Positions 4,775 to 32,346 of a stretch of 32,967 nt of DNA are shown here, in pieces. This DNA is from Octopus bimaculoides. Its lineage: Eukaryota. The stretch is taken from contig NC_068985.1 in the NCBI RefSeq assembly GCF_001194135.2, forward strand, positions 80,466,352 to 80,499,318. Direction: 5' to 3'. A program made the translations under genes and the position numbers. A model generated the notes under the pieces. That model saw only the letters and a list, made by a program, of their open reading frames with translations. It did no database searches and was not told where the DNA came from. The first letter of the stretch is position 1, and each line of letters starts with the position of its first letter.

Positions 4775-5908
4775 GCGAAATATTTTTTACCACGAGAATT
4801 CAGGACCCCAGTAATGAACTCATTTGCATACAGCCAATCAGAACTCACCTTGACTTTGTTGTCAAGTTAGCAAACACACTCTACCAAGTAAACTCAAGAC
4901 AAAGAACGGTGTTGTTAGTCGACCGATCGCCAAGTTACACCTGATTTTAGGCGACAAGTAATTAGATAGATTTACTCTTTACTCTTTTACTTGTTTCAGT
5001 CATTTGACTGTGGCCATGCTGGAGCACCGCCTTTAGTCGAGCAAATCGACCCCAGGACTTATTCTTTGTAAGCCTAGTACTTATTCTATCAATCTCATTT
5101 ACTGAACCGCTAAGTTACGGGGACGTAAACACACCACCATTGGTTGTCAAGCGATGGTGGGGGACAAACACAGACACACAAACATATACACAGATNNNNN
5201 NNNNNNNNNNNNNNNNNNNNNNNNNNNNNNNNNNNNNNNNNNNNNNNNNNNNNNNNNNNNNNNNNNNNNNNNNNNNNNNNNNNNNNNNNNNNNNNNNNNN
5301 NNNNNNNNNNNNNNNNNNNNNNNNNNNNNNNNNNNNNNNNNNNNNNNNNNNNNNNNNNNNNNNNNNNNNNNNNNNNNATATATATATATATATATATACA
5401 TATGTACGACGGGCTTCTTTCAGTTTCCATCTACCAAATCCACTCACAAGGCTTTGGTCGGCCCGAGGCTATAGTAGAAGACACTTGCCCAAGGTGCCAC
5501 GCAGTGGGACTGAATCCGGAATCATGTGTTTGGTAAGCAAGCTACTTACCACACAGCCACTCCTGCATATATACTTATTATCGGATTTTGTTAGGGCCCC
5601 ATATGGTAAAGATGTGGATGGGAAAAGTGTGGGTAGAGGGTGATGTGCGAGCAACCCTCTCCCCTTACTGTTTTAGAAAGTAAACAACAACACAAATAAC
5701 TACGCAGAGACAGCCGTGGTTGAAACAAGAACAAGAAGCATTATTAAAAGAGAAAAGAAGTATGGTTATTCCTTACCCAAATGACCTTATCTTATCGCCC
5801 ATCACTTGTTATGCGCTCATAAATTAGTTTGATAGTTGAGTTCTGATTGGCTGTATGCAAATGAGTTCATAACTGGGGGTCCGGAAATTTCGTGGGAAAA
5901 AAATTCGC
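4775..5908. mobile_element. Non-autonomous TIR DNA transposon, probably Mutator-like (about 73-bp TIRs, 9-bp TSD)
   Basis: TIRs 4775-4847 and 5837-5908 (GCGAA...TTCGC) share ATGAACTCATTTGCATACAGCCAATCAGAACTCA exactly. Flanking 9-mers GCCCTGTCC (4766-4774) and GCCCCGTCC (5909-5917) match 8/9. Superfamily inferred from the 9-bp TSD and G...C ends. Confidence 0.8.
4972..5568 (-). mobile_element. SINE family A, near full length, with a gap in its central microsatellite
   Basis: Tail (TTTACTC repeats, TGTTTCAGTCATTTGACTG...), central CA/TA tract containing gap 5196-5377, then CGACGGGCTTCTTTCAG...GGGACTGAATCC...ACACAGCCACTCCTGC (tRNA-like head on the minus strand). Confidence 0.92.
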
Positions 5909-7900: not shown

Positions 7901-8345
7901 CGCACTGTGCGCCAAGCATTATGTATCACTGTTAAAACGTTTCAATTTCTCTTATTAANNNNNNNNNNNNNNNNNNNNNNNNNNNNNNNNNNNNNNNNNN
8001 NNNNNNNNNNNNNNNNNNNNNNNNNNNNNNNNNNNNNNNNNNNNNNNNNNNNNNNNNNNNNNNNNNNNNNNNNNNNNNNNNNNNNNNNNNNNNNNNNNNN
8101 NNNNNNNNNNNNNNNNNNNNNNNNNNNNNNNNNNNNNNNNNNNNNNNNNNNNNCCCATGTATTTGTGGGCCACAATTGAAAATAAAACAATTCTTTACGG
8201 TATTTCATGTAAACGTGCAGCTTATACGCGTAAGGTGAAAAATCGGTATTTTTTACGCGCGTGAAATCTCAAGCAAAGTTTATTCAGCGCTTATAAACAG
8301 CTGGTATTTACATGGGCAAGAATGATGTTATAATGTGAATTTCAA

Positions 8346-9125
8346 CTCCGACAGTGCATTCTTATCGTATGGGATGAGTGCACAACGGCTCACAGAGGAG
8401 GCTTAGAGGCATTAGATAGAGCTCTGAGGGATAGACGAGACAGTCAGGCTCCAATGGGTGGTGTAACGCTTCTACTGTCAGGTGACTTAAGATAAACTCT
8501 TCCTATCATTCCTAAAGGTACGAGGGCAGATGAAGTACAAGCGTGCTTTAAGTCCTCACCGTTGTGGCGTCATGTTATGACACTTACACTATCCACATAT
8601 ATGAGAGCCCGACTTTATGGTGATCGAAATTCTTCCCAGTTTGCTATAGATACTTTGGAACTTGGTGACGGTAAGTTCTCTTTGGACGCAGCAGATGAAC
8701 TAGACATCTCGCCACTTTGTACCATTGTATCTTCTATCAACGAACTAAAGGACAAAGTGTTCCCAAATTTGCAGGACAACTACTACAATCTTAACTGGTT
8801 GTGAGAAAGAGTAATACTTGCTGCTAAGAACACCACCGGAGGCAAGTTGAATGATCAACTCCTCCATTCTCTACCCGGAAATCATCAAACATTTAAGTCA
8901 ATTGATACCGTGGTAGACAACAATGAGGCAGTTAATTATCCTACCAATTTTTTTAACTCATTGGACCCTCCATGCCTTCCTCCACATACATTGCAGCTGA
9001 AAAAAGGGATTCCAATAATGCTGCTTCGGAATTTGGAGCCACCAAAACTATGCAACGGAACACGACTGGTTGTTAAAAAAGTTCTTAACCACGTAACAGA
9101 GGCTACCATAATTTCTGGGAGCAGG
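8346..9125 (+). pseudogene. Helitron PIF1-like helicase remnant
   Basis: One frame with two stops: LIVWDECTTAHRGGLEALDR (motif II), LLLSGDLR*TLPIIPKG (motif III), FKSSPLWRHV, VNYPTNFFNSLDPPCLPPHTLQLKKGIPIMLLRNLEPPKLCNGTRLVVKK. Typical Helitron RepHel helicase. Confidence 0.93.
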
Positions 9126-9621
9126 ACATAATATAGAAAGTCAGGTTTATAAACTTTATAAACGCCGAGACGAACTGCTAATTGTATTGAAGCAGTAATC
9201 TCATGCTTATGTTACTGATTCTAAATTAGTTCCCCCGCTTAATTCTTAACCAAACATATGGGTTATTATGANNNNNNNNNNNNNNNNNNNNNNNNNNNNN
9301 NNNNNNNNNNNNNNNNNNNNNNNNNNNNNNNNNNNNNNNNNNNNNNNNNNNNNNNNNNNNNNNNNNNNNNNNNNNNNNNNNNNNNNNNNNNNNNNNNNNN
9401 NNNNNNNNNNNNNNNNNNNNNNNNNNNNNNNNNNNNNNNNNNNNNNNNNNNNNNNNNNNNNNNNNNNNNNNNNNNNNNNNNNNNNNNNNNNNNNNNNNNN
9501 NNNNNNNNNNNNNNNNNNNNNNNNNNNNNNNNNNNNNNNNNNNNNNNNNNNNNNNNNNNNNNNNNNNNNNNNNNNNNNNNNNNNNNNNNNNNNNNNNNNN
9601 NNNNNNNNNNNNNNNNNNNNN

Positions 9622-10177: not shown

Positions 10178-11910
10178 AAAGGCGTCAGCAAGAGGATTTC
10201 GAGCCTTTCCTCGAGCCAAGAAGCCTTCGACGCAGCAGCCCCGTGCTATAATGAAGCCCTAGCTGCCAGCGGGTTTAGGGACCGCATCACCTACATGTCG
10301 GAACCCAACAGCCACAGAAGAAATCGCCGCAGAAATACGATTTGTGCCCCTCCCTACTCCCTTGACACAATAACACTCGTAGGTAGAGTTTTCCTTAAAT
10401 TAATAGATAAGCATTTCACTAGCTCCCATAGGTACGGTCCCATATTCAACAGGCACAACATTAGGATCTCGTTTAGCTGCTCCCCCTACATTAAGAACAT
10501 CTTGGTTAGCGCCCCTAGAACACAGGATGAGCCGGGTTGTTCATGCAGGATCCGAAACAGTTGACCAGTAAGAGGTCGCTGCGAAACCAAAAGGGTCGTA
10601 TATCAAGCCGAGGTTCTAACACGACATGGCTTTATCACGGGCAGATAGATAACGGTCGTAGACATGAGAACAGAGCCAGTAACATAGCCACCGTTACCAC
10701 CACCGCCAGCATTGATGACAACAAAGCTAATAGCAAAAGCAGCGGCATCGCCAACAGCAGCGACATCACCGCCATCACCAGCCTCACAAATAGCTTCCCC
10801 GACGTCCATGATGCCAGACCTATTAGCCACTATAGTAGTAGTAGCTCAAGCAATAGGTCCAGTTCCAGTAACACAATCACCATCGCCACCAACGCCACAA
10901 TGCATCGCTAACAACAGCAAAGGCAACGTCAACAGTAGTGACATCACCACCACCAGCAGCCTTACCAATAGTTTCCCTGATGTCCACGATGCCAGGCCTA
11001 TTGGTCACTATAGTAATAGTCGTAAAGGCAACTGATCCAGTCCCATCGCTGGCTATAACGGCAGCAGCAGCAGCAGAACCAGCAGTGGTGATAGCACTAC
11101 TGTCGCCACCACCACATCCTCCACTATCACCAGCGGCAGCAGCAGCAGCAGCAACAGCAGCAACAGCAGCAGCAAGATCAACAACAACAGCAGCAACTAC
11201 ACCACCGGCAAGCATTAGCGGCAACAGTAGCAACAGCAGGACCAACAACAGCAATAGACACAACGACAGCAGCAACTGGCGCTGTAGCAACGGTAGCAGC
11301 AACAGCAACACCAACAACAGCAGCACCTATAACAGCAACAGGCGCAACGACATCATGCGTCCACAGACGTACGTGGCATACACTGGGAACTCTCTCAAAC
11401 AGCGTATTTCCAACCATCTGTACTCTTTCAGAGTCCCGGAAAGGAGATAAAGGACATCGCTGGCCAGCCATATCTGGTAATTACGAGACGAAGAGATTCC
11501 ATACTCGATTGCGTGGAAAATACTCGAGAACCCAGGTCCCTACACCAACGGGACGAAACGGTGCAAGTTATGCATTGCCGAACGCACGAGGATCCTTAAA
11601 GACTCGCTCGTGTCAAAGGGCATCCTGAACTCCAAGACCGAAATTTTCGGACCATGCCTGCGTTTTAGGAAACTCCTGCTGGCGTTTTGGAATTCTCATG
11701 GCGGCACCACAGCCGTTAATCAATAGCCAAGGCCAAAGGGAGACAATCGTTTACCTTCGTGGTGCTTTGGTGACCGCAAGATGGCAGCGCAGCGGAAGAT
11801 CGAGGGACAATGGCAAAGGGAGATAATCACTTAGGGTTTTACCCTTAAAAATGAGGCTTTTCCCCCTCCATATTTTAAAGAGGTCTGAGGCCAGTAGTGT
11901 TTGGGGTCTG
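10178..11910 (+). mobile_element. 5'-truncated Penelope-like retroelement (RT thumb, linker, split GIY-YIG, 3' pLTR)
   Basis: GVSKRISSLSSSQEAFDAAAPCYNEALAASGF (10181-), RRRNTICAPPYS..GRVFLKLIDKHF..IFNRHNIRISFSCS, CSCRIRNS*PVRGRCETKRVVYQAEV (to about 10617), low-complexity insert, then TYVAYTGNSLKQRISNH...KRCKLCIAE...ILNSKTEIFGPCLRFRKLLL (about 11367-11685). Several stops. Confidence 0.92.
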
Positions 11911-13189: not shown

Positions 13190-13977
13190 NNNNNNNNNNN
13201 NNNNNNNNNNNNNNNNNNNNNNNNNNNNNNNNNNNNNNNNNNNNNNNNNNNNNNNNNNNNNNNNNNNNNNNNNNNNNNNNNNNNNNNNNNNNNNNNNNNN
13301 NNNNNNNNNNNNNNNNNNNNNNNNNNNNNNNNNNNNNNNNNNNNNNNNNNNNNNNNNNNNNNNNNNNNNNNNNNNNNNNNNNNNNNNNNNNNNNNNNNNN
13401 NNNNNNNNNNNNNNNNNNNNNNNNNNNNNNNNNNNNNNNNNNNNNNNNNNNNNNNNNNNNNNNNNNNNNNNNNNNNNNNNNNNNNNNNNNNNNNNNNNNN
13501 NNNNNNNNNNNNNNNNNNNNNNNNNNNNNNNNNNNNNNNNNNNNNNNNNNNNNNNNNNNNNNNNNNNNNNNNNNNNNNNNNNNNNNNNNNNNNNNNNNNN
13601 NNNNNNNNNNNNNNNNNNNNNNNNNNNNNNNNNNNNNNNNNNNNNNNNNNNNNNNNNNNNNNNNNNNNNNNNNNNNNNNNNNNNNNNNNNNNNNNNNNNN
13701 NNNNNNNNNNNNNNNNNNNNNNNNNNNNNNNNNNNNNNNNNNNNNNNNNNNNNNNNNNNNNNNNNNNNNNNNNNNNNNNNNNNNNNNNNNNNNNNNNNNN
13801 NNNNNNNNNNNNNNNNNNNNNNNNNNNNNNNNNNNNNNNNNNNNNNNNNNNNNNNNNNNNNNNNNNNNNNNNNNNNNNNNNNNNNNNNNNNNNNNNNNNN
13901 NNNNNNNNNNNNNNNNNNNNNNNNNNNNNNNNNNNNNNNNNNNNNNNNNNNNNNNNNNNNNNNNNNNNNNNNNNNNN

Positions 13978-15500: not shown

Positions 15501-15567
15501 AGTATATCGCATCGCGCTCATTGTGTCTGCATGTGAGCGTTATTACGCAGTATCAGACAGTACCAAA

Positions 15568-16190
15568 CAAAAGCTTTGAAAAGATTTTCATACGACCCAG
15601 TTTTATGTGCAGTGGTAGGAAAAAATCTTTCCAGTAGTCCACTGTTGCGTTTTGACGTTGTCCTTCCTCTCAGAGAACTCGGTCCATTTCGGCTAGAGCC
15701 GCTGGAGGTATTACATCACGTTGTCCCCGATGTACCAAAGACAAAAATGGTAAAGAGATTTAGTAAGACCGCTTCGGAGAGCCATTCAGAATGTCCCCAT
15801 TTCGAAGACTCCGTTAACTTTATGGTTGCATTATGGCTCAGATAACCTTATGATATAATTTATCATACTTCAAGGCAAGGCTTTGATGCAGATGTCTTCA
15901 ATTAGGTGCACTGAGTGAGCCAGGTAAAAACGGATAGTTCTCCCCACCACCCATGACCTTGAGGCTCCCGGATAAACTGGTAATGGAGAGGCGCCACTCG
16001 TCTGAGTTAAGGACGATTCCGATTGCCCCGAATAAACTGGTCATATTTTGGCAGAATCAGAGCCATCTCGCCGGTGAAGAACTTTAAAAGAACCTTTGTG
16101 ATGCTTATTTTGATCTGTGACAAGCACACCTTCATCTAATCATCCCATTGACTGCATCTTTGATAAGCAGAGATAGACCCATCCTTTTAG
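15568..16190 (-). pseudogene. DDE transposase remnant, probably Chapaev (Chapaev3-like, CMC group)
   Basis: Across frameshifts: SLFGAIGIVLNSDEWRLSITSLSGSLKV..NYPFLP, AHSVHLIED, LKYD, GVFEMGTF*MALRSGLTKSLYHFCLW, FLPLHIKLGRMKIFSKL. These match EWRLFIDSS, GDFKM..LQ.G.TK..CFLC and LPPLHIKLGLMK motifs. Superfamily label is from memory and needs an HMM check. Confidence 0.75.
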
Positions 16191-17065
16191 GCAGTTAAAA
16201 CTAAACTAAACTAATGAGCTTAAGGCCTCTGTATTTATATTTTTATATTGCAGGCACAACATCTACTTTCCTGACACTGATGGTTCGGAATCTCTCATAA
16301 TCCTCACTAAAATACGAGCAAGAACTTCAAATTCATGTAGACGCCAAACTAGCTTACCGGTACCTTATACAGACTAGTACCTTGTACAGTACAGTATTAA
16401 TAAACTTGTATCATTTATACTAATGTACAGGTACCTTTGTTTCATCTGATTTTATGAGTACATTCAATATTTACTTGCTGAACCCGTGAATAGTTCACGG
16501 AATCAATAGTAAACTTATTAGGTTATTTCTGAAAACTGTAACAAAAAAACCTGCTAATTATTGAAAAGTGAAGGAAATTGGAATACAATGATTACTTAAT
16601 GCATGTTATATATACACTGTATATACTTTGTGCACAATTTTACAGACTTAATACACAGCGGTCTCCCTCTTTCACTCTCACTCTTCGCCTTACCCTCTTT
16701 TCTATCTTCCTTTTCTTTCGCTCTTCGCCTTTTCCTTCAACTAATTACGTGAAAGCGTTACAGACGGGTTAAGTAACGGAGGCAAAAAGCTTAGTTCAAC
16801 CAAGTATATTACGCATTTCATTCACCACCATCTCTCCCTTCCCACCTTCCTACCTCCACCTCCCTTCCCTTCCCACCTTCCCCTCCCCTATCCCACATTT
16901 CCCCTCCCTCCCCTTCAACTAATCATGTGGAATCGTTATGGACGGCTAAGTAACAAGCAGAATTATTATGAGATTTAATTTAGAGCGTGTCGACTAAAGT
17001 GACCACTCCTACTCGGAAAAATTAGTAATCCAGAGATTTCGGAAAATTGATGTTGTACTTAAATC

Positions 17066-17470
17066 AGAAATTTCTAGAAAATTCTCGAAAGTTTTTGAAA
17101 ATTCTCGTAAATTCTAGAAAATTCTCAAAGGTTCTAGGGAATTGTCGAATATTCAAGAGAATTCTCGAAAGTTCATGAAAATTCTGGTAAGTTTATGAAA
17201 GTTCTCGAAAGTTCTAGAAAATTCCTGAAAGTTCATGAAAATTCTCGAAAGTTCTGGAAAATTCTCGTAAATTCTAGAAAATTCTCAAAGGTTCTAGAGA
17301 ATTGTCGAATATTCAAGAGGATTCTCGAAAGTTCATGAAAATTCTGGTAAGTTTATGAAAGTTCTAGAAAATTCCTGAAAGTTCATGAAAATTCTCGAAA
17401 GTTCTGGAAAATTCTGGAAAGTTCCTAAAAGTTCTGTAAAATTCTTGAAATTTCTGCACAGTTCAAGAAA
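17066..17470. repeat. 10-bp-unit minisatellite with a 160/150-bp higher-order repeat, forming contiguous inverted nGAAn pentamers (HSE-like)
   Basis: Units (A/G)TTCNNGAAA with no indels. Higher-order units 17101-17260 and 17261-17410; the second lacks one GTTCTCGAAA unit. Confidence 0.97.
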
Positions 17471-17814
17471 ATTTTTCTATCAGATTACTGAACACTGATT
17501 CTGTCTGGAGGTTTCTGGAAAACAGGAACACTTCAAAGTATCATTAACAAACTCACAAAAACAATGTTGGAAGAAAATAATACACATTTTAGGAATACAA
17601 GAAAATAAAATTAAAAAAAAACAAAACTGCATCACTCAGGTAAGTCTATAATCAAATGTGGTCCAGCAGTGACTATCTCGTCTTTTTAGCATATCTAGAG
17701 CAAATAATTTCAACATTTGTGCTGCGGGTTTTTGGGTCGTGCCATAAATTGTCAGGTTATTGAGGAAAGTTCAGTGTTTTTAATGTATCCGAAACGCGCT
17801 GTTCTACTTGTTTC

Positions 17815-18206
17815 GTAACTTGATTGCGGCTATGTTGACGTACTGGCTTGGAGGGGGTTTAACAGACCAGATCGACCAAATACTTACTTTAAACCTTATT
17901 CTATCAATCACTTTTTGCTGAACCGCTAAGTTACAAGAGTGAAAACAAACCAACAAAGACGCACACGAACTCATATGTACCCATATCCATCCATCCATCC
18001 GTACGTACGTACATACATACAACATACATACACACACGCATACATACACCAACAATGACGAGCGTCCGTACAGTTTCTATCAAACGAATTCACTCAAAAG
18101 GCATCGGTTGATCACGGGCTACAGTAGAAGACAGTTTTCCAAGGTGCCATGCACTGGGACTGAACTCAAAACCGCGTTGTTGCGAAATGAGTTCCTAAAT
18201 CACACA
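17815..18206 (-). mobile_element. SINE family A, old diverged copy
   Basis: Tail, TGAACCGCTAAGTTAC, central CATC/CGTA/CATA tract and head (CAAGGTGCCATGCACTGGGACTGAACTC) in family order. Confidence 0.8.
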
Positions 18207-18282
18207 ATTAAATATTTCTTCACAATCGAGTGGAATCCGTGAACAACTCTGTATTAAACAATTCAATTATACGTATTTTATA

Positions 18283-18690
18283 TCTTTTGTCTTTCGCTTA
18301 TTTCTGTCACTGGGATGCGGTCATGCTGGGGCACCGCCTTGAAGGGTTTAGTCGGACAAATCGACACTCGATGCCTATTTTAAAAGAAAAATATCTAGTA
18401 CTTATTCTATCGGCCGCTGAGTTACGGGGATGTAAACAAACCAGTAGCGGTTGTCAAGCAATGGTGAGTGACAAATACAAACATAAAGACTCACACACAT
18501 ATATTTATACATACATACATATGTGTGTGTATACGACAGGCTTCCATACAGTTTCCGTCTACCAAATTCACCCATAAGACATCGGTCAGATCGGTGGTTA
18601 AAGTAGACGACATCTTCCCGAAGTGCCGTGTAGCTGGACTGAACCCGAAACCACGTGACTTCAAAAGGAACTTCTTAAACCACTCAGCCA
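18283..18690 (-). mobile_element. SINE family A, diverged full-length copy
   Basis: CATGCTGGGGCACCGCC...CGGTTGTCAAGC...short TA/CA tract...ACGACAGGCTTCC...GGACTGAACCCG...CACTCAGCC. Confidence 0.88.
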
Positions 18691-20131: not shown

Positions 20132-21114
20132 GTAGTGAAACTACCTATCGCCATTATATACAAATCATCTTCTCCACTGTTATAAATATATTCAAGTTCG
20201 GGCGTAGTAGAGAGCAGCCTACTGTATCCATCACGTGACTGATTATTATTTGAAGCGGCAACTGCTTCGTACCGTTCCCGCCAGAACGCAAACTGACCAA
20301 TCACAGCCCTTAATAAGGTCACGTGATAGTGTTTTTCTAATGCCTCTCTGGAGCCCCTATTTTGCTTTAAATAGACGAAATTATACCCGGCAAATTCGTC
20401 GCGGTTCAGATCTCTTAGAGACCTGTTCCATGTACCACACAAAGCAGCAGCAGTTCCAGCGCCAACATCAATAGCTTCGTACAACACTACGACTACCAGC
20501 GTCAACATGACTTCTACGTACACAAGCTAACCAAACTACCGCGGCATTTCTCTCTTCGATTCTGTTTGTGTGATTCATCTTCGCCACGAAATAACAGCCA
20601 AGAGCCCAGCCTGCGAAGAACGTCTGTACTCAGGAACCCGGCTTGGCATGGAAGCCCTAACATCACAACGAGTGATCGCGCTGTCCCACACGCCTCAACT
20701 TCTTACATACAGACTCTTACTATTGTGTACTCTAAGAACTGGCAAATTCTTATATGTGTTACTGACTCTTTTTCTATCTGCTGTATCACACGCATACACA
20801 TGCATGTATCACTTACACACTCTTTTCTTTACACGACGGCCTGTCTTTTATTATGTTTTATTATGTCGCACTCACACTCACACACAGACATACATTTTAA
20901 TGCAACAATAAATATTACTGTAATTCATCTTTATCGGTTGTGTTCTATCGTCTGCATTACTGGCATTTACGAATTCACTATGTTATCGAAGTATAACATA
21001 TTTATATCATCTGATATAATTTTGTGTTCGACCGTGCGACGCGTTATAATAAAGGAGCCCTGTTTTTCCATTCGTCACCATTTCTCCTTTTGGGTTCGCA
21101 CGGTCGTTCTTACA
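20131..21114 (+). mobile_element. Probable solo LTR (984 bp) with a 4-bp TSD
   Basis: TGTAG...TTACA termini, CATA on both sides (20127-20130, 21115-21118). Removing it rejoins two halves of one SINE. Contains two E-boxes, a CCAAT box and AATAAA at 20907 and 21048. Orientation is inferred from motif order. Confidence 0.72.
20231..20374 (+). promoter_or_regulatory. Promoter-like motif cluster in the putative LTR U3
   Basis: TCACGTGAC (20231-20239), GACCAATCA (20295-20303), GTCACGTGA (20318-20326), TTTAAATAG (about 20366-20374). Confidence 0.45.
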
Positions 21115-21290
21115 CATATATATACGACGAGTTTCTTTCAGTTTCCATCTACCAAATCCACTCAATAGGCTTTGGTCGGCCCGAGGCTATAGTAGACGAC
21201 ACTTGCCCAAGGTGCCACGCAGTGGGACTGAACCTAGAACCATGTGGTTGGGAAGCAAGCTTCTTACCACACAGCCACTCCTGCGCCTAT
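21115..21290 (-). mobile_element. SINE family A, head half
   Basis: TATATACGACGAGTTTCTTTCAG...GGGACTGAACC...ACACAGCCACTCCTGCGCCTAT, near-identical to 5400-5566. Confidence 0.92.
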
Positions 21291-26215: not shown

Positions 26216-26345
26216 TTCACAAATGATTGTATATCGCTTCCTTCTTTTCCCAAAGAATATATCTTCAATGCTTTCACTCTCTTCCGATTGTTCTTGAATG
26301 TTGGGAATCAGTCTTATCTAGCAGGTTCGTTGAACTGCATCCACT

Positions 26346-26390
<45 letters not shown>

Positions 26391-26400
26391 AACAAACAAA

Positions 26401-26460
26401 CGGCAGCATGGAGTTCTTCTGCTGCACGACAACGCCCGCCCTCATATCGCCAATATGACC
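26401..26460 (+). pseudogene. mariner transposase fragment (second catalytic Asp motif)
   Basis: RQHGVLLLHDNARPHIANMT, running into a gap. Confidence 0.85.
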
Positions 26461-26900: not shown

Positions 26901-27584
26901 TATCTTGCTCTTTGTCTCTTTGATCTTTTTCTAATCCTTCAATTCCGCTGCCCCCTACCCCTCTCTCCTCCTTCCACGTGACCGATGTCCAGCTAGCCAT
27001 GATCTTTCTTGGCCTGACTGCCGACCGTCAACACCACTTATGTTCATCTCCTATGTTCCTGCCTTTAGGCGTTCACTTTATACACGCCAGCTCAGTTTGA
27101 TTCGTCCTCAGTTGAAAGACATCTGTTATTATATTCGTGTTGTTTGTATTTGTAACTATGAACCATGTTCTCTGTTTTCTTGTCTTTATTGCCGTACACA
27201 TTTGCTAGCTTTCTTACAAAAAATTTAATGCTCTTAGCTTAGACTTAGCTTAGACTTTTTGAGGGGCAACCAGATCGAACAGTCTCAAATTTAACAGCTC
27301 GAAACTGTAAGGATATCTGGTAACTTGACTAAAGAAAGAAGGCCACAAATGATCGGTCCTTTTTTTCTCTGTCCTTCTAATTGTTGTTTTTCCTGTCCGC
27401 CTTTTGTATCGTCTATCTGTCCGAATGTTTTATTGTCCTCTATTATGTAAATATTTACGTAAATATTTCATTTGAAAAGTTACGTAATATTTGTGAATTT
27501 TTACATTAGTGACTCCTCATCAGACTTACATCAAAATTTGCGCATTTACATTGTGTGACTATCAAGTGTTGTATGCTGCTTATA

Positions 27585-27796
27585 TCCTTTATCTTTTACT
27601 TGTTTCAGTTATTAGACTGCGGCTTTGTTGAGGTACCGCCACGGAGGACTTTTAGTCAAATGTATCTACCCCAGTACTTATCTTTATTGAAAGCCTGGTA
27701 ATTATTCTATCGGACCTTTTTACTGAGCTGCTAAGTTACGGAGACTTAAACACACCAGCACCGGTTGTCAAGTGGGTGGTGGGTTGGAACAGACAT

Positions 27797-27833
<37 letters not shown>

Positions 27834-28452
27834 NNNNNNNNNNNNNNNNNNNNNNNNNNNNNNNNNNNNNNNNNNNNNNNNNNNNNNNNNNNNNNNNNNN
27901 NNNNNNNNNNNNNNNNNNNNNNNNNNNNNNNNNNNNNNNNNNNNNNNNNNNNNNNNNNNNNNNNNNNNNNNNNNNNNNNNNNNNNNNNNNNNNNNNNNNN
28001 NNNNNNNNNNNNNNNNNNNNNNNNNNNNNNNNNNNNNNNNNNNNNNNNNNNNNNNNNNNNNNNNNNNNNNNNNNNNNNNNNNNNNNNNNNNNNNNNNNNN
28101 NNNNNNNNNNNNNNNNNNNNNNNNNNNNNNNNNNNNNNNNNNNNNNNNNNNNNNNNNNNNNNNNNNNNNNNNNNNNNNNNNNNNNNNNNNNNNNNNNNNN
28201 NNNNNNNNNNNNNNNNNNNNNNNNNNNNNNNNNNNNNNNNNNNNNNNNNNNNNNNNNNNNNNNNACACACACACACACACACACACACGCAGAGGTATAC
28301 ATATCTATTCTCCCAGTTTCTGTCTACCAAATCCACTCACATGGCTTTAATCGGCCCGTGGCTATAGTAGAAAACTCTCACTCAAAGTGCCACGCAGTGG
28401 GATTGAACTCTAAACTATTTGGTTGGAAAGCAAGTTTCTTATCACACAGCCA
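27585..28452 (-). mobile_element. SINE family A, full length, with a gap in its central (CA)n
   Basis: Tail 27585-27800, (CA)n flanking gap 27834-28264, head 28300-28452. Confidence 0.88.
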
Positions 28453-29099
28453 TATATTTAAAAGAAAATTTCTTAAAAGCATTTTTGGAAAGGCAGATTA
28501 ACGCAGAACTGATGTGAAGAAGGTTTTCACCTTTTCAGCTTGAAAAGCTCTTACGCATATCCTTCCTTGCAATCTGTGGTAACCTTTTTTGTTCTTTTTT
28601 TCTTAAATATAATTGTATGGCAACCATAGATAGAAGCAATAATCTAGCTGAGTGAGAATAAACTTCTTCCAGAGATCAACACAACCGTTGTTCTCTTGTT
28701 CTAGATATTCTTAGGATCCATCCTGCCAATATTCTGTGTGTTTAGTGTGTTTAGCCAATTACTTAATATCCGGAGGCAAAGTAGTGTTATTACTCATGAT
28801 TTCCAGGTTCGCACCGTTTGTAACTTCGGTCTTGCAGGTTCTTCCAGCTCTGAGGATTAGAGGTTATAGCCTGCTAGAGGTCTGAGAGTGAATGTCCTGA
28901 AACATACTTTCATCAAATTTTCTGTGTGTGTGTCTGTGTGTGTATTTCACTCCTTTTGTATATGGTATTGAGGCTTGTAATATCTTAGGGTACTTTTATT
29001 GCTTTCTATATTTTAGTATCTTGGGTACGTGCGCGCGCGCGTGTGTGCAAGAATATTCTGCACAAGTAGAGTTTGTGTAAAGTCGATGATTCACTCACA

Positions 29100-29455: not shown

Positions 29456-30371
29456 NNNNNNNNNNNNNNNNNNNNNNNNNNNNNNNNNNNNNNNNNNNNN
29501 NNNNNNNNNNNNNNNNNNNNNNNNNNNNNNNNNNNNNNNNNNNNNNNNNNNNNNNNNNNNNNNNNNNNNNNNNNNNNNNNNNNNNNNNNNNNNNNNNNNN
29601 NNNNNNNNNNNNNNNNNNNNNNNNNNNNNNNNNNNNNNNNNNNNNNNNNNNNNNNNNNNNNNNNNNNNNNNNNNNNNNNNNNNNNNNNNNNNNNNNNNNN
29701 NNNNNNNNNNNNNNNNNNNNNNNNNNNNNNNNNNNNNNNNNNNNNNNNNNNNNNNNNNNNNNNNNNNNNNNNNNNNNNNNNNNNNNNNNNNNNNNNNNNN
29801 NNNNNNNNNNNNNNNNNNNNNNNNNNNNNNNNNNNNNNNNNNNNNNNNNNNNNNNNNNNNNNNNNNNNNNNNNNNNNNNNNNNNNNNNNNNNNNNNNNNN
29901 NNNNNNNNNNNNNNNNNNNNNNNNNNNNNNNNNNNNNNNNNNNNNNNNNNNNNNNNNNNNNNNNNNNNNNNNNNNNNNNNNNNNNNNNNNNNNNNNNNNN
30001 NNNNNNNNNNNNNNNNNNNNNNNNNNNNNNNNNNNNNNNNNNNNNNNNNNNNNNNNNNNNNNNNNNNNNNNNNNNNNNNNNNNNNNNNNNNNNNNNNNNN
30101 NNNNNNNNNNNNNNNNNNNNNNNNNNNNNNNNNNNNNNNNNNNNNNNNNNNNNNNNNNNNNNNNNNNNNNNNNNNNNNNNNNNNNNNNNATCTGTCTAAT
30201 GGCCATTTCTGAAAAGAGTATCAGTTTTGTTGTTACGTTAAAAAAAAAAAGATAGATATAACGAACTAATGGAGTCATTTTCCAGTTCCAGTGTTGATAG
30301 AGATACATCGACGTTACTGTGTAAATATATATAATGATTCAATTGTTTGTATCTTTATTGTTTATTTTTTG

Positions 30372-30838
30372 TTTAGTTGTTTCAGTCACTGGGCTGCGGG
30401 CTTACTGGGAGCACCACATTGAAGAAGGTTTTAGTCGAAGAACAATTCGGCCGAAGTACTTATGTTTTCCATTCCCCCCCCCTTCTTTTTTGAAGCGTAG
30501 TATTTATTCTATCGGTAATTTATGCTGAACTGCTAAGTTATGGGAACGTAACACCAGTTGTCAAGCAGTGGTAAGAAACAAACACAAACACACACAAACA
30601 CACACACACACATTCACACACACGTACATACATACATACATACATGGTGGTTGTCTACTCCTTACACAAAGTTTGACCACCTCCTGCACCTACACCTTAG
30701 CCCTTTCATGGCGTCTGATGTGGCTTTTTAAACCAGACAATGTTTTGAAAAAACACCCACACAGATTGCATCTCTGATTTTTACTACCAATACCTGCATA
30801 CATACCTACATACATACCTACATACATACATACATACA

Positions 30839-30869
<31 letters not shown>

Positions 30870-31054
30870 GTGCGCGCGTGTATGTGTGTGTGTAACGGGA
30901 TTCTTTCACTTTCTGTCTACCAAATCCACTCGCAAGGCTTGGATCGGACCCGAGACTATAGTAGAAGACACTTGCCCGAGGTGTCACGCAATGCGACTGA
31001 ACTCAAAACCATGTGGTTAGGGAGCAAATTTCTTACCACACAACCACGCCTGCA
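30372..31054 (-). mobile_element. SINE family A, diverged copy with an internal insertion
   Basis: Tail 30372-30590 and head 30895-31054; the centre holds (CA)n, (TACA)n and 150 bp of foreign sequence. Confidence 0.85.
30646..30794 (-). mobile_element. 5'-truncated LINE 3' end with a terminal C2H2 zinc finger (RTE-like, inferred)
   Basis: GIGSKNQRCNLCGCFFKTLSGLKSHIRRHERAKV* (30794-30690), a 44-nt 3' UTR, then an (ATGT)n tail. Confidence 0.65.
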
Positions 31055-31879
31055 TCTTAAATGTGTTATTTCACAAAGGAAAGCAAGACGATTCTTCATA
31101 TCTACAAGGTTAGATGATAGTAGACTAAAAATAAGAGTCATCGTTGTTTGTGCAGCCTGAAGATAGTTGGACTACAGCTGTGATTCCCTACGTGGGGCAT
31201 ACGCCCCACCGGAGCTGGCTTAGGGAAACTTTGGTGGGGCGTGGGAACCAATTTTTTTTTAGTGGGACATGGANNNNNNNNNNNNNNNNNNNNNNNNNNN
31301 NNNNNNNNNNNNNNNNNNNNNNNNNNNNNNNNNNNNNNNNNNNNNNNNNNNNNNNNNNNNNNNNNNNNNNNNNNNNNNNNNNNNNNNNNNNNNNNNNNNN
31401 NNNNNNNNNNNNNNNNNNNNNNNNNNNNNNNNNNNNNNNNNNNNNNNNNNNNNNNNNNNNNNNNNNNNNNNNNNNNNNNNNNNNNNNNNNNNNNNNNNNN
31501 NNNNNNNNNNNNNNNNNNNNNNNNNNNNNNNNNNNNNNNNNNNNNNNNNNNNNNNNNNNNNNNNNNNNNNNNNNNNNNNNNNNNNNNNNNNNNNNNNNNN
31601 NNNNNNNNNNNNNNNNNNNNNNNNNNNNNNNNNNNNNNNNNNNNNNNNNNNNNNNNNNNNNNNNNNNNNNNNNNNNNNNNNNNNNNNNNNNNNNNNNNNN
31701 NNNNNNNNNNNNNNNNNNNNNNNNNNNNNNNNNNNNNNNNNNNNNNNNNNNNNNNNNNNNNNNNNNNNNNNNNNNNNNNNNNNNNNNNNNNNNNNNNNNN
31801 NNNNNNNNNNNNNNNNNNNNNNNNNNNNNNNNNNNNNNNNNNNNNNNNNNNNNNNNNNNNNNNNATAGAATTCGATGAT

Positions 31880-32346
31880 GTCCAGTGTAGTTATGTGAGA
31901 CATTTAGAAGTTTCGTTCTAAATCGTGTTGGCAATCGCCGACTCGTTCCTCCAATATGCAACATACCGCATCGTTAGAGACGTGAACGGAAAAGCTGGGT
32001 CCAGTGTAATTATGTCAGACATCTGGAAGTTTCTCTTTAAATCAGTTTGTCAATCACCTACTTGTTCCTCTTATATGCAACATATCGCACAATTAGAAAC
32101 GTGAACGGAAAAGCTAGGTCCGCGTAGATATGTCAGATATCTAGAAGTTTCTTTCTAAATCGTTTTGCTAATCACCGATTGCTCCTCCAATAGGCAACAT
32201 ACCGTGAACGGAAAAGTTGAACCCAGTGTGGTTATGGCAGATATCTAGAAGTTTCTCTCCAAATCGTTTTGCCAATCGACTGGTTCCTATAATATGCAAC
32301 ATACCGCGTAATTAGAGACGTGAACGGAAAAGCTGGGCCCGTGTAG
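31880..32346. repeat. About four copies of a 119-bp tandem repeat
   Basis: Units start at 31880, 31999, 32118, about 32220 and 32337; conserved GTGAACGGAAAAG and ATGCAACATA. The third unit carries a deletion of about 16 bp. Confidence 0.95.

What the first reader, a model, noticed from the sequence alone, without database searches (positions are those of the whole stretch)
17066..17470. Giant heat-shock-element array: 81 in-phase inverted nGAAn slots in 405 bp
Seen: the minisatellite reads GAAnnTTCnnGAAnnTTC continuously with no indel. By hand count 63 of 81 pentamer slots are perfect, including two runs of 14 consecutive perfect pentamers (17197-17264 and 17357-17424). CTAGAAAATTCTCG matches the classical CnnGAAnnTTCnnG consensus, and length variation occurs only in whole 10-bp units. 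Known: HSF trimers bind three or more inverted nGAAn units cooperatively, and Caenorhabditis Helitrons spread HSE minisatellites that rewire the heat-shock response. A perfect CAG|GTAAGT donor lies 170 bp downstream (17637-17645; could be chance). Inference: a high-avidity HSF platform (stress enhancer, promoter of a heat-induced RNA, or HSF sink), possibly transposon-borne. I know of no description in cephalopods.
Basis: partly seen in the sequence, partly recalled or inferred. Interest (0 to 1): 0.8.

Follow-up and report, generated by a model that had tools for sequence, protein, structure and literature searches.

The report
Heat-shock-element-like minisatellite in octopus DNA
A 410-bp tandem repeat in an octopus genome reads exactly like a very long binding site for the heat-shock transcription factor, but the evidence points to an ordinary, recently expanded minisatellite whose unit happens to match that motif, not a proven stress switch.

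Summary
Positions 17066-17475 form an indel-free 10/20-bp minisatellite in which 63 of 81 five-base slots are perfect alternating nGAAn/nTTCn. There are two runs of 14 perfect slots, and 36 of the window's 37 three-unit HSE matches lie here (0.33 expected). By sequence the array should bind HSF, but nothing shows selection or function. Half the array is a very recent 150/160-bp duplication (2 substitutions plus one whole 10-bp unit). The spacer HSF ignores (GAA-AR-TTC) is conserved, while the base before GAA is fully degenerate. The window holds no chaperone or other recognisable host gene. The Helitron idea fails: the only Helitron remnant lies 8 kb away, is decayed, and its 90%-identical sister copy in Octopus bimaculoides carries no array. 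Arrays of the same unit type occur independently in bacteria, an archaeon and giant-virus contigs, which lack HSF. In those arrays the GAA/TTC cores decay as fast as the spacers. The array is also predicted to be the most curved DNA in the window. Most likely it is a neutral minisatellite that HSF could bind incidentally. Genome-wide copy number and in vivo binding could not be tested.

The parts
17066..17475 (.). The minisatellite: 41 units of 10 bp (nGAAARTTCT). The ancestral unit is 20 bp, CGAAAGTTCT+AGAAAATTCT. 63 of 81 five-base slots are perfect nGAAn/nTTCn.
17106..17265 (.). Higher-order repeat copy 1 (16 units, 160 bp)
   Evidence: differs from copy 2 by 2 substitutions (17138, 17160) and one extra unit; TRF period 160
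17266..17415 (.). Higher-order repeat copy 2 (15 units, 150 bp), 98.7% identical to copy 1, so a very recent duplication
17206..17215 (.). The single whole-unit (10 bp) insertion/deletion difference between the two higher-order copies
17196..17265 (.). Run of 14 consecutive perfect pentamers (room for 4 adjacent HSF trimers)
17356..17425 (.). Second run of 14 consecutive perfect pentamers, largely the duplicate of the first
17637..17645 (+). CAG|GTAAGT splice-donor-like 9-mer 162 bp downstream of the array. It has no supporting ORF, TATA box or transcript evidence and is possibly chance.
   Evidence: 1 observed against 0.2 expected in the window

Best explanation
This is a locally grown, evolutionarily young minisatellite in transposon-rich, apparently gene-free octopus DNA. 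A 20-bp unit (CGAAAGTTCT-AGAAAATTCT) expanded by replication slippage or unequal exchange, always in whole 10-bp steps. Most recently a 150/160-bp block duplicated. Each 10-bp unit happens to be a head-to-head HSE dimer (GAAnnTTC) spaced exactly 10 bp from the next, so repetition automatically creates an uninterrupted HSE array. The same repetition puts A-tracts in phase with the helix and produces intrinsically curved DNA. By sequence, the array could bind at least 14 adjacent HSF trimers on perfect sites alone. If local chromatin is open it could be occupied after heat shock. That capacity is most likely an incidental by-product, not a selected function. The array is not carried by a Helitron. 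Shown: the anatomy, the recent duplication, the absence of the array from sister Helitron loci, and the independent occurrence of such arrays in HSF-less genomes. Inferred: the slippage mechanism, neutrality, and in vitro binding competence.
For: The two higher-order copies differ by 2 substitutions in 150 bp plus one whole unit, so about half of the 'perfect' slots are one recent copying event. Array edges are sharp. The flanks are not repeated in the window or in 71 kb of other octopus DNA, and there are no TIRs. The spacer conservation pattern is the reverse of HSF preference. GAA-nn-TTC, which PMC8379338 calls unrestrained, is AR in 33 of 40 units. TTC-nn-GAA, usually pyrimidine-purine, is YR in only 14 of 40, and the base before GAA is fully degenerate with A6 C7 T7 G5. 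The minimum number of mutational states per position is similar for cores and spacers. Arrays with at least 4 GAAARTTCnn units were found at 41 metagenome, 3 viral and 6 prokaryotic-genome loci. None of the 44 metagenome and viral loci shares flanks with the window. The six prokaryotic-genome loci were not compared with it. Their neighbours are bacterial, archaeal or giant-virus genes (TatC, Wzi, Bac_transf, pilin N-methyl motif, bacterial topoisomerase I, NCLDV capsid). None of 20 is a chaperone. Named hosts include Neolewinella lacunae and Methanosarcina spelaei. In the 44 metagenome and viral arrays, cores decay at least as fast as spacers, 19.7% against 16.0%. Pfam finds no chaperone or other recognisable host gene in the 33-kb window, and Rfam finds no RNA family. 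About 0.33% of random 10-bp units would be HSE units.
Against: Within the de-duplicated array, deviations fall on spacers more than cores: 40/100 against 13/150 under a 10-bp model and 28/100 against 13/150 under a 20-bp model. The three most variable positions (0, 5, 9) are all HSE 'n' positions, which has a chance of 4/120. The TT of TTC is invariant in 40/40 units. There is no phase-breaking indel despite roughly 25% divergence between units. At 81 slots it is the longest array of its kind seen here; the environmental arrays have at most 28. A perfect 9-mer splice donor lies 162 bp downstream. High-avidity HSE clusters in C. elegans Helitrons, and SatIII in human heterochromatin, are bound by HSF in vivo (PMC6927752, PMC8535310). 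Incidental origin therefore does not exclude real binding.
Confidence: 0.55

Rival explanations
1. Functional HSF platform. The array is a selected, heat-responsive enhancer, or the promoter of a non-coding RNA whose first exon ends at the 17637 donor. It would be bound cooperatively by many HSF trimers after stress. This is a non-Helitron counterpart of the Caenorhabditis HSE clusters.
For: 63/81 perfect slots and two runs of 14. Density is comparable to Helitron HSE clusters that HSF-1 does bind. Variation is concentrated on three 'n' positions and TT is invariant. Phase is never broken. A perfect CAGGTAAGT lies 162 bp downstream, 1 observed against 0.2 expected in the window.
Against: The spacer pattern contradicts HSF preferences. 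Spacer position 4 is as conserved as the cores. Half the array is a duplication with only 2 substitutions, so there has been little time for selection to be visible. There is no chaperone gene, TATA box, ORF or RNA family nearby. In Drosophila only a small fraction of HSE motifs are bound, depending on prior active chromatin (PMC2936546), and this locus is TE debris. Identical-type arrays exist in HSF-less organisms and show no core protection.
Confidence: 0.15
2. Internal or subterminal tandem repeat of an unrecognised mobile element (non-autonomous Helitron/Helentron, MITE or other), present in many copies across the octopus genome.
For: The window is saturated with TE fragments: Helitron helicase, SINE-like copies, a mariner-like motif. 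Carriage of minisatellites by mollusc and nematode Helitron-type elements is from my own knowledge. A decayed ORF remnant lies 800 bp upstream.
Against: No second copy of the array or its flanks in the window or in 81 kb around three octopus Helitron loci. The 90%-identical sister helicase fragment shares only the 777-bp fragment itself. No TIRs. The upstream ORF remnant has no homologue. No protein-level echo of the array ORF in 5.8 billion proteins.
Confidence: 0.17
3. Structural DNA element. The phased A-tracts make a strongly curved segment that acts through DNA shape, by nucleosome positioning or exclusion or by matrix attachment, independently of HSF.
For: The wedge model gives 12.2 deg/turn for the array. 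The maximum was 10.0 in 300 shuffles and 9.7 in 217 other 405-bp tiles of the window. The model reproduces the classical (GAAAATTTTC)n curved against (GTTTTAAAAC)n straight contrast, 21.6 against 2.4. Conservation of A at position 4 and R at position 5 extends the A-tract, which HSF does not require.
Against: Curvature follows automatically from the unit and its 10-bp period, so it needs no selection. Curvature does not explain the conserved G and C of GAA/TTC. There is no evidence of any functional context.
Confidence: 0.08

Closest known systems
Helitron-acquired HSE clusters of Caenorhabditis (Garrigues et al. 2019, PMC6927752)
   Same: Overlapping tandem HSEs at very high density. Here there are 36 three-unit HSEs in 405 bp; in Caenorhabditis there are more than 10, and in some genomes more than 50, per 1-kb bin. 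Both are repetitive in nature and sit outside classical chaperone promoters.
   Different: The Caenorhabditis clusters sit inside annotated Helitrons, are dispersed in hundreds of copies and are shown to bind HSF-1. Here the Helitron association was tested and not found, only one copy is known, and binding is untested. That paper reported such clustering only in Caenorhabditis among the UCSC metazoan genomes it surveyed.
Canonical heat-shock elements of chaperone gene promoters
   Same: Alternating inverted nGAAn pentamers in strict 5-bp register. It matches the CnnGAAnnTTCnnG consensus 16 times.
   Different: Promoter HSEs have about 3-8 units next to a core promoter and a chaperone gene (from my own knowledge). 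Here there are 81 slots with no gene or promoter evident. The TTC-YR-GAA spacer preference is absent and the 'free' GAA-nn-TTC spacer is fixed as AR.
Human satellite III / nuclear stress bodies (PMC8535310)
   Same: A tandem repeat that HSF1 binds under stress and that can act as a transcription-factor trap and non-coding RNA source.
   Different: SatIII forms large pericentromeric blocks of head-to-tail GGAAT-type repeats and is reported only in apes and humans. This is a single 410-bp array of inverted units.
Phased A-tract curved DNA, e.g. Hagerman's (GAAAATTTTC)n (from my own knowledge)
   Same: A nearly identical decamer (GAAAATTCTn) repeated with a 10-bp period. It is predicted to be strongly curved.
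   Different: That is a physical property and not a biological family. No function is implied, and curvature was modelled here, not measured.
Ordinary eukaryotic minisatellites with higher-order structure
   Same: A 10-20 bp unit, head-to-tail copies, variant units, block duplications, whole-unit indels, and a location in TE-rich non-coding DNA.
   Different: None in anatomy. The only special feature is that the unit coincides with a transcription-factor motif.

Membership tests
Heat-shock element (HSF binding site) | At least three contiguous alternating inverted nGAAn pentamers in 5-bp register | tested here: met
   63/81 slots perfect, runs of 14; definition from PMC8379338
Heat-shock element (HSF binding site) | Spacer preferences: TTC-(pyrimidine-purine)-GAA common, GAA-nn-TTC unrestrained; G the most conserved base | tested here: not met
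   TTC-YR-GAA in 14/40 units. GAA-AR-TTC in 33/40. G is 88% conserved, while TT is 100% and spacer position 4 is 88% in all units and 92% in the de-duplicated set
Heat-shock element (HSF binding site) | Bound by HSF trimers on heat shock; confers heat-inducible transcription | not testable with these tools
   Needs ChIP/CUT&RUN, EMSA, PRO-seq or a reporter assay
Heat-shock element (HSF binding site) | Located at a promoter or enhancer of a stress-responsive gene | tested here: not met
   Pfam on 81 window ORFs finds only PIF1 helicase and one weak zinc finger, no chaperone. Rfam finds nothing. Exons without Pfam domains could be missed.
Helitron-acquired HSE cluster (Caenorhabditis type) | High-density cluster (more than 10 HSEs per kb) | tested here: met
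   36 overlapping three-unit HSEs in 405 bp; threshold from PMC6927752
Helitron-acquired HSE cluster (Caenorhabditis type) | Cluster lies inside a Helitron | tested here: not met
   The only Helitron remnant is 8340-9131, decayed, 8 kb away across 3 gaps. Sister copy L045 (90% identity) and loci L046 and L047 have no array within 10 kb.
Helitron-acquired HSE cluster (Caenorhabditis type) | Many dispersed copies sharing element sequence | not testable with these tools
   No searchable octopus genome. None found in the window or in 81 kb sampled.
Satellite III-type HSF-bound satellite | Very large blocks of head-to-tail GGAAT-type repeats | tested here: not met
   A single 410-bp array of inverted units
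Minisatellite | Head-to-tail units of about 10-100 bp with variant units, higher-order blocks and whole-unit length changes | tested here: met
   TRF periods 20/80/160; 150/160-bp block duplication with one 10-bp unit indel
Minisatellite | Length polymorphism between individuals | not testable with these tools
   The locus could not be retrieved from other assemblies
Phased A-tract curved DNA | A-tracts repeated in phase with the helical repeat; curvature above background | tested here: met
   GAAAA/GAAAG every 10 bp. The model gives 12.2 deg/turn, above all shuffles and all other window tiles. This is a model only, with parameters from memory.

The most novel reading that the evidence does not exclude
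The array is a genuinely used, non-Helitron, high-density HSE cluster in a cephalopod. It would be bound by many HSF trimers on heat shock and would drive a stress-induced non-coding transcript, or buffer free HSF. That would make it an independent, minisatellite-based origin of the 'super-HSE' so far documented only in Caenorhabditis Helitrons and, in a different form, in primate SatIII.
Probability: 0.12. Interest if true: 0.65.

Novelty: new member of a known kind. Interest (0 to 1): 0.3.

Why it matters
If the array were bound and active, ordinary slippage would have created a very high-avidity stress-factor platform without a transposon vector, in a lineage where heat-shock regulation is barely studied. 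As it stands, the main lesson is cautionary. A 10-bp tandem repeat whose unit is GAAnnTTCnn produces a spectacular 'HSE array' automatically. Such arrays also arise in bacteria, archaea and giant viruses that have no HSF. Motif perfection in a tandem repeat is therefore not evidence of function. The locus is still a clean natural substrate for asking how far HSF avidity can overcome closed chromatin.

Tried and rejected
1. An ungapped comparison of the two 160-bp copies gave 11 spacer against 2 core differences. I rejected it as a register artefact of a one-unit indel. Correctly aligned, the copies differ by 1 core and 1 spacer substitution, so the comparison has no power.
2. Exact-ORF look-ups for five ORFs on or beside the array found nothing. 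The locus could not be recovered from other assemblies or transcriptomes.
3. A protein search with the array's 47-aa ORF found no candidate.
4. A protein search with the decayed ORF remnant upstream (15540-16300, minus strand) found no hit.
5. A search for TIRs or hairpins flanking the array gave only weak 16-19 nt imperfect pairs.
6. Rfam at gathering threshold on the whole window gave no hit.
7. Literature searches for HSE with octopus or minisatellite, and for octopus satellites, found nothing relevant.
8. An attempt to estimate the genome-wide number of 10/20-bp minisatellites from 99 kb of octopus DNA failed. There are too few complex arrays for an estimate, so the expected number of chance HSE-phase arrays remains unknown.
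9. The bacterial promoter/terminator scanner was not used because it does not apply to a eukaryote.

Full report
OBSERVATION. The region is a real tandem repeat. Read in the phase starting at 17066, 63 of 81 five-base slots carry a perfect GAA or TTC core in strict alternation. The two runs of 14 perfect slots are at 17196-17265 and 17356-17425. GAAnnTTCnnGAA occurs 37 times in the window, 36 of them inside the array, against 0.33 expected from dinucleotide-preserving shuffles. The Pelham consensus CnnGAAnnTTCnnG occurs 16 times in the array, including CTAGAAAATTCTCG at 17074-17087. TRF gives period 20 (20.9 copies, consensus GAAAGTTCTAGAAAATTCTC) with higher-order periods of 80 and 160 bp. 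The array runs from 17066 to 17475 with sharp edges, and no indel breaks the 5-bp register.

WHAT THE NUMBERS DO NOT MEAN. The 81 slots are not independent. The pattern follows automatically once a 10-bp unit of the form nGAAnnTTCn is repeated head to tail. At the window's base composition, a random 10-bp unit has this form in some rotation with probability about 0.33%. In addition, 17106-17265 (16 units) and 17266-17415 (15 units) are one very recent duplication. Aligned with a single one-unit gap (17206-17215), they differ by only two substitutions, one in a core (17138) and one in a spacer (17160). An ungapped comparison had suggested 11 spacer against 2 core differences. That was a register artefact and I discard it.

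After removing the duplicated block, 25 units remain. Deviations from the consensus are 13/150 at core positions. At spacer positions they are 40/100 under a 10-bp model and 28/100 under the 20-bp model that fits the ancestral unit CGAAAGTTCT-AGAAAATTCT. The three most variable positions (0, 5, 9) are all HSE 'n' positions, which has a chance of 4/120, and TT is invariant in 40/40 units. That favours constraint, but three things weaken it. First, the minimum number of different mutational states per position is similar for cores and spacers, so the frequency difference may reflect which variants happened to be amplified. Second, spacer position 4 is A in 23/25 units, as conserved as the cores. 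Third, the pattern is the reverse of what HSF prefers. PMC8379338 states that TTC and a following GAA are usually separated by pyrimidine-purine, while the pair between GAA and TTC is unrestrained. Here GAA-nn-TTC is AR in 33/40 units. TTC-nn-GAA is YR in only 14/40, and the base before GAA is fully degenerate. About half of that degeneracy is C/T, as expected from CpG decay. The test is inconclusive and leans weakly towards constraint.

ORGANISM AND CONTEXT. The window is 15% assembly gaps and packed with repeats. A Pif1-type helicase fragment (8340-9131; Pfam PF21530 and PF05970) has its best matches in Octopus bimaculoides at 82% and 78%, so the host is an octopod. SINE-like elements in the window match copies in O. 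bimaculoides chromosomes at up to 92%. Pfam scanning of 81 ORFs from the whole window found only the helicase and one weak C2H2 finger, with no chaperone or other host gene. Rfam found nothing. Upstream of the array lies a stop-riddled ORF remnant without homologues. Downstream, a SINE-like element begins near 17800-17900. The CAGGTAAGT at 17637 is the only one in the window against 0.2 expected. The sequence before it has no ORF or TATA box, and no transcript evidence could be obtained.

IS IT HELITRON- OR TRANSPOSON-BORNE? The helicase fragment carries in-frame stops and is truncated at 9131. It is separated from the array by 8 kb, three gaps and other TE pieces. I fetched three O. bimaculoides Helitron loci with 10-kb flanks. 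The closest, L045, is 90% identical over window 8345-9121, and homology stops at the fragment's ends. None of the three carries an array. About 71 kb of non-gap sequence holds only two isolated three-unit HSE matches and nothing resembling the array's flanks. No TIRs flank the array, and its flanks are unique within the window. The Helitron hypothesis is therefore not supported. Carriage by an unrecognised element cannot be excluded without a whole-genome scan.

THE SAME KIND OF ARRAY ELSEWHERE. I scanned public collections with four consecutive GAAARTTC units at 10-bp spacing. This found 41 metagenome loci, 3 giant-virus-like contigs and 6 loci in named prokaryotes. The named hosts are Neolewinella lacunae, Methanosarcina spelaei, and MAGs of Caulobacteraceae, Planctomycetaceae, Calditrichota and Verrucomicrobiales. 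In the 44 metagenome and viral loci the arrays have 8-28 perfect in-phase slots, different spacer bases and GC contents of 18-56%, and none shares flanks with the window. They are independent origins. The six prokaryotic-genome loci were not compared with the window. Twenty neighbouring genes were identified. They include TatC, Wzi, a bacterial sugar transferase, DegT, a pilin N-methylation motif, a TolB-like propeller, bacterial topoisomerase I, CysRS, and the NCLDV major capsid and VLTF3 proteins. Only two are clearly eukaryotic (LUC7 and a RING/B-box protein), and none is a chaperone. Prokaryotes and giant viruses have no HSF, so this sequence type arises and persists without HSF. In the units of the 44 metagenome and viral arrays that were not forced by my search pattern, cores deviate at least as often as spacers, 238/1206 against 129/804. 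The octopus array is, however, the longest of its kind seen here.

A PHYSICAL RIVAL. The unit is almost Hagerman's curved decamer. It reproduces the classical contrast between (GAAAATTTTC)n at 21.6 deg/turn and (GTTTTAAAAC)n at 2.4. It gives the array 12.2 deg/turn. The highest of 300 shuffles reached 10.0, and the highest of 217 other 405-bp tiles in the window reached 9.7. Conservation of A at position 4 and R at position 5 fits A-tract persistence better than HSF recognition. Curvature is also an automatic consequence of the unit, so it needs no selection either.

MOST LIKELY EXPLANATION. This is a young, locally expanded minisatellite. It grew in whole 10-bp steps and by a recent 150/160-bp block duplication, in TE-rich DNA with no evident gene. 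Its unit happens to be a head-to-head HSE dimer. By established HSF biochemistry the DNA should bind HSF trimers cooperatively, since one DNA-binding domain contacts each nGAAn and three make a trimer (PMC8379338). There are at least 14 adjacent sites on perfect runs alone. In Drosophila, only a small fraction of HSE motifs are occupied, depending on pre-existing active chromatin (PMC2936546). On the other hand, very dense HSE clusters in C. elegans Helitrons, and SatIII in human heterochromatin, are bound (PMC6927752, PMC8535310). I put about 0.55 on a neutral minisatellite with any binding incidental. I put 0.15 on a selected HSF platform, 0.17 on an unrecognised mobile element's repeat, and 0.08 on a shape-based element.

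COMPARISON WITH THE KNOWN, AND NOVELTY. In density the array resembles the Caenorhabditis Helitron HSE clusters. Garrigues et al. found those only in that genus among the UCSC metazoan genomes surveyed. The defining Helitron residence was tested here and not met, and dispersal and binding are untested. It is not SatIII-like in unit, orientation or scale. It meets every anatomical criterion of an ordinary minisatellite. I found no cephalopod description in the held literature. I file it as a new member of a known kind: a minisatellite whose unit coincides with a transcription-factor motif.

VERDICT. Interest is 0.3. The sequence is striking and would be cheap to test. The available evidence favours coincidence plus tandem amplification over a selected heat-shock device, and the Helitron link fails. 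The decisive steps are a genome-wide copy and flank census, comparison of the orthologous locus across octopods, and HSF occupancy and nascent transcription after heat shock.

Noticed in passing
window 31880-32346: A separate 119-bp-unit tandem repeat, 4.1 copies, 73% matches, next to an assembly gap.
   Followed up: no
window 8340-9131 (+); L045 10057-10823: A decayed Helitron-type Pif1 helicase fragment with in-frame stops, truncated at 9131. It is 90% identical at the DNA level to a copy on O. bimaculoides chromosome CM046613.1, and homology is limited to the 777-bp fragment.
   Followed up: yes
window ~4976-5578, 18071-18690, 21112-21290, 27580-27833, 28265-28453, 30808-31062: Multiple copies of a SINE-like element, translating to a recurrent '...FQFPSTKSTHKALVGP...' motif. 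They are up to 92% identical to copies in the three O. bimaculoides loci fetched.
   Followed up: partly
window 16734-16777 and 16912-16954: A local 178-bp-spaced duplication (82% identity), each copy preceded by a long CT-rich tract, immediately upstream of the array.
   Followed up: no
window 26227-26460 (+): An ORF ending in '...LLLHDNARPHIANMT' at a gap edge, a mariner/Tc1-like transposase motif by recollection. It was not checked against a profile on its own.
   Followed up: no
window ~9.9-10.2 kb and 11178-11471 (-): Two related minus-strand ORFs, both beginning 'MAGQRC.' and continuing 'SPFRDSE.VQM.GNTLFER...'. They flank a CAG/CAA-rich stretch (11061-11340), which suggests a duplicated TE segment.
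   Followed up: no
window 15540-16300 (-): A stop-riddled ORF remnant containing '...LPLHIKLGRMKIFSKLL'. It has no Pfam hit and no homologue at E<=0.001.
   Followed up: yes
window 30708-30770 (-): A single C2H2 zinc-finger-like motif (CNLCGCFFKTLSGLKSHIRRH), with a weak Pfam zf-C2H2 match among the window ORFs.
   Followed up: no
L010, L037, L042, L043, L044 (e.g. L010 13977-14056): Related AT-rich (GC 18-22%) giant-virus-like contigs of 0.3-0.7 Mb share a 16-slot (ATTCCAGAAA)n array at homologous places.
   Followed up: partly
L027 2101-2150; L029 1687-1736: A 10-slot GAAARTTCnn array sits 141 bp from an NCLDV major capsid protein gene, between it and a VLTF3-like gene. It may be a viral intergenic or promoter repeat.
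   Followed up: partly
L048-L053: Arrays of at least four GAAARTTCnn units occur in named prokaryotes, with two adjacent matches each in Neolewinella lacunae and Methanosarcina spelaei. Their genomic context was not examined.
   Followed up: no
window, 13 N runs (e.g. 13190-13977, 29456-30189): 15.5% of the window is assembly gaps, many of them bordered by microsatellites. Features spanning gaps cannot be assessed.
   Followed up: no
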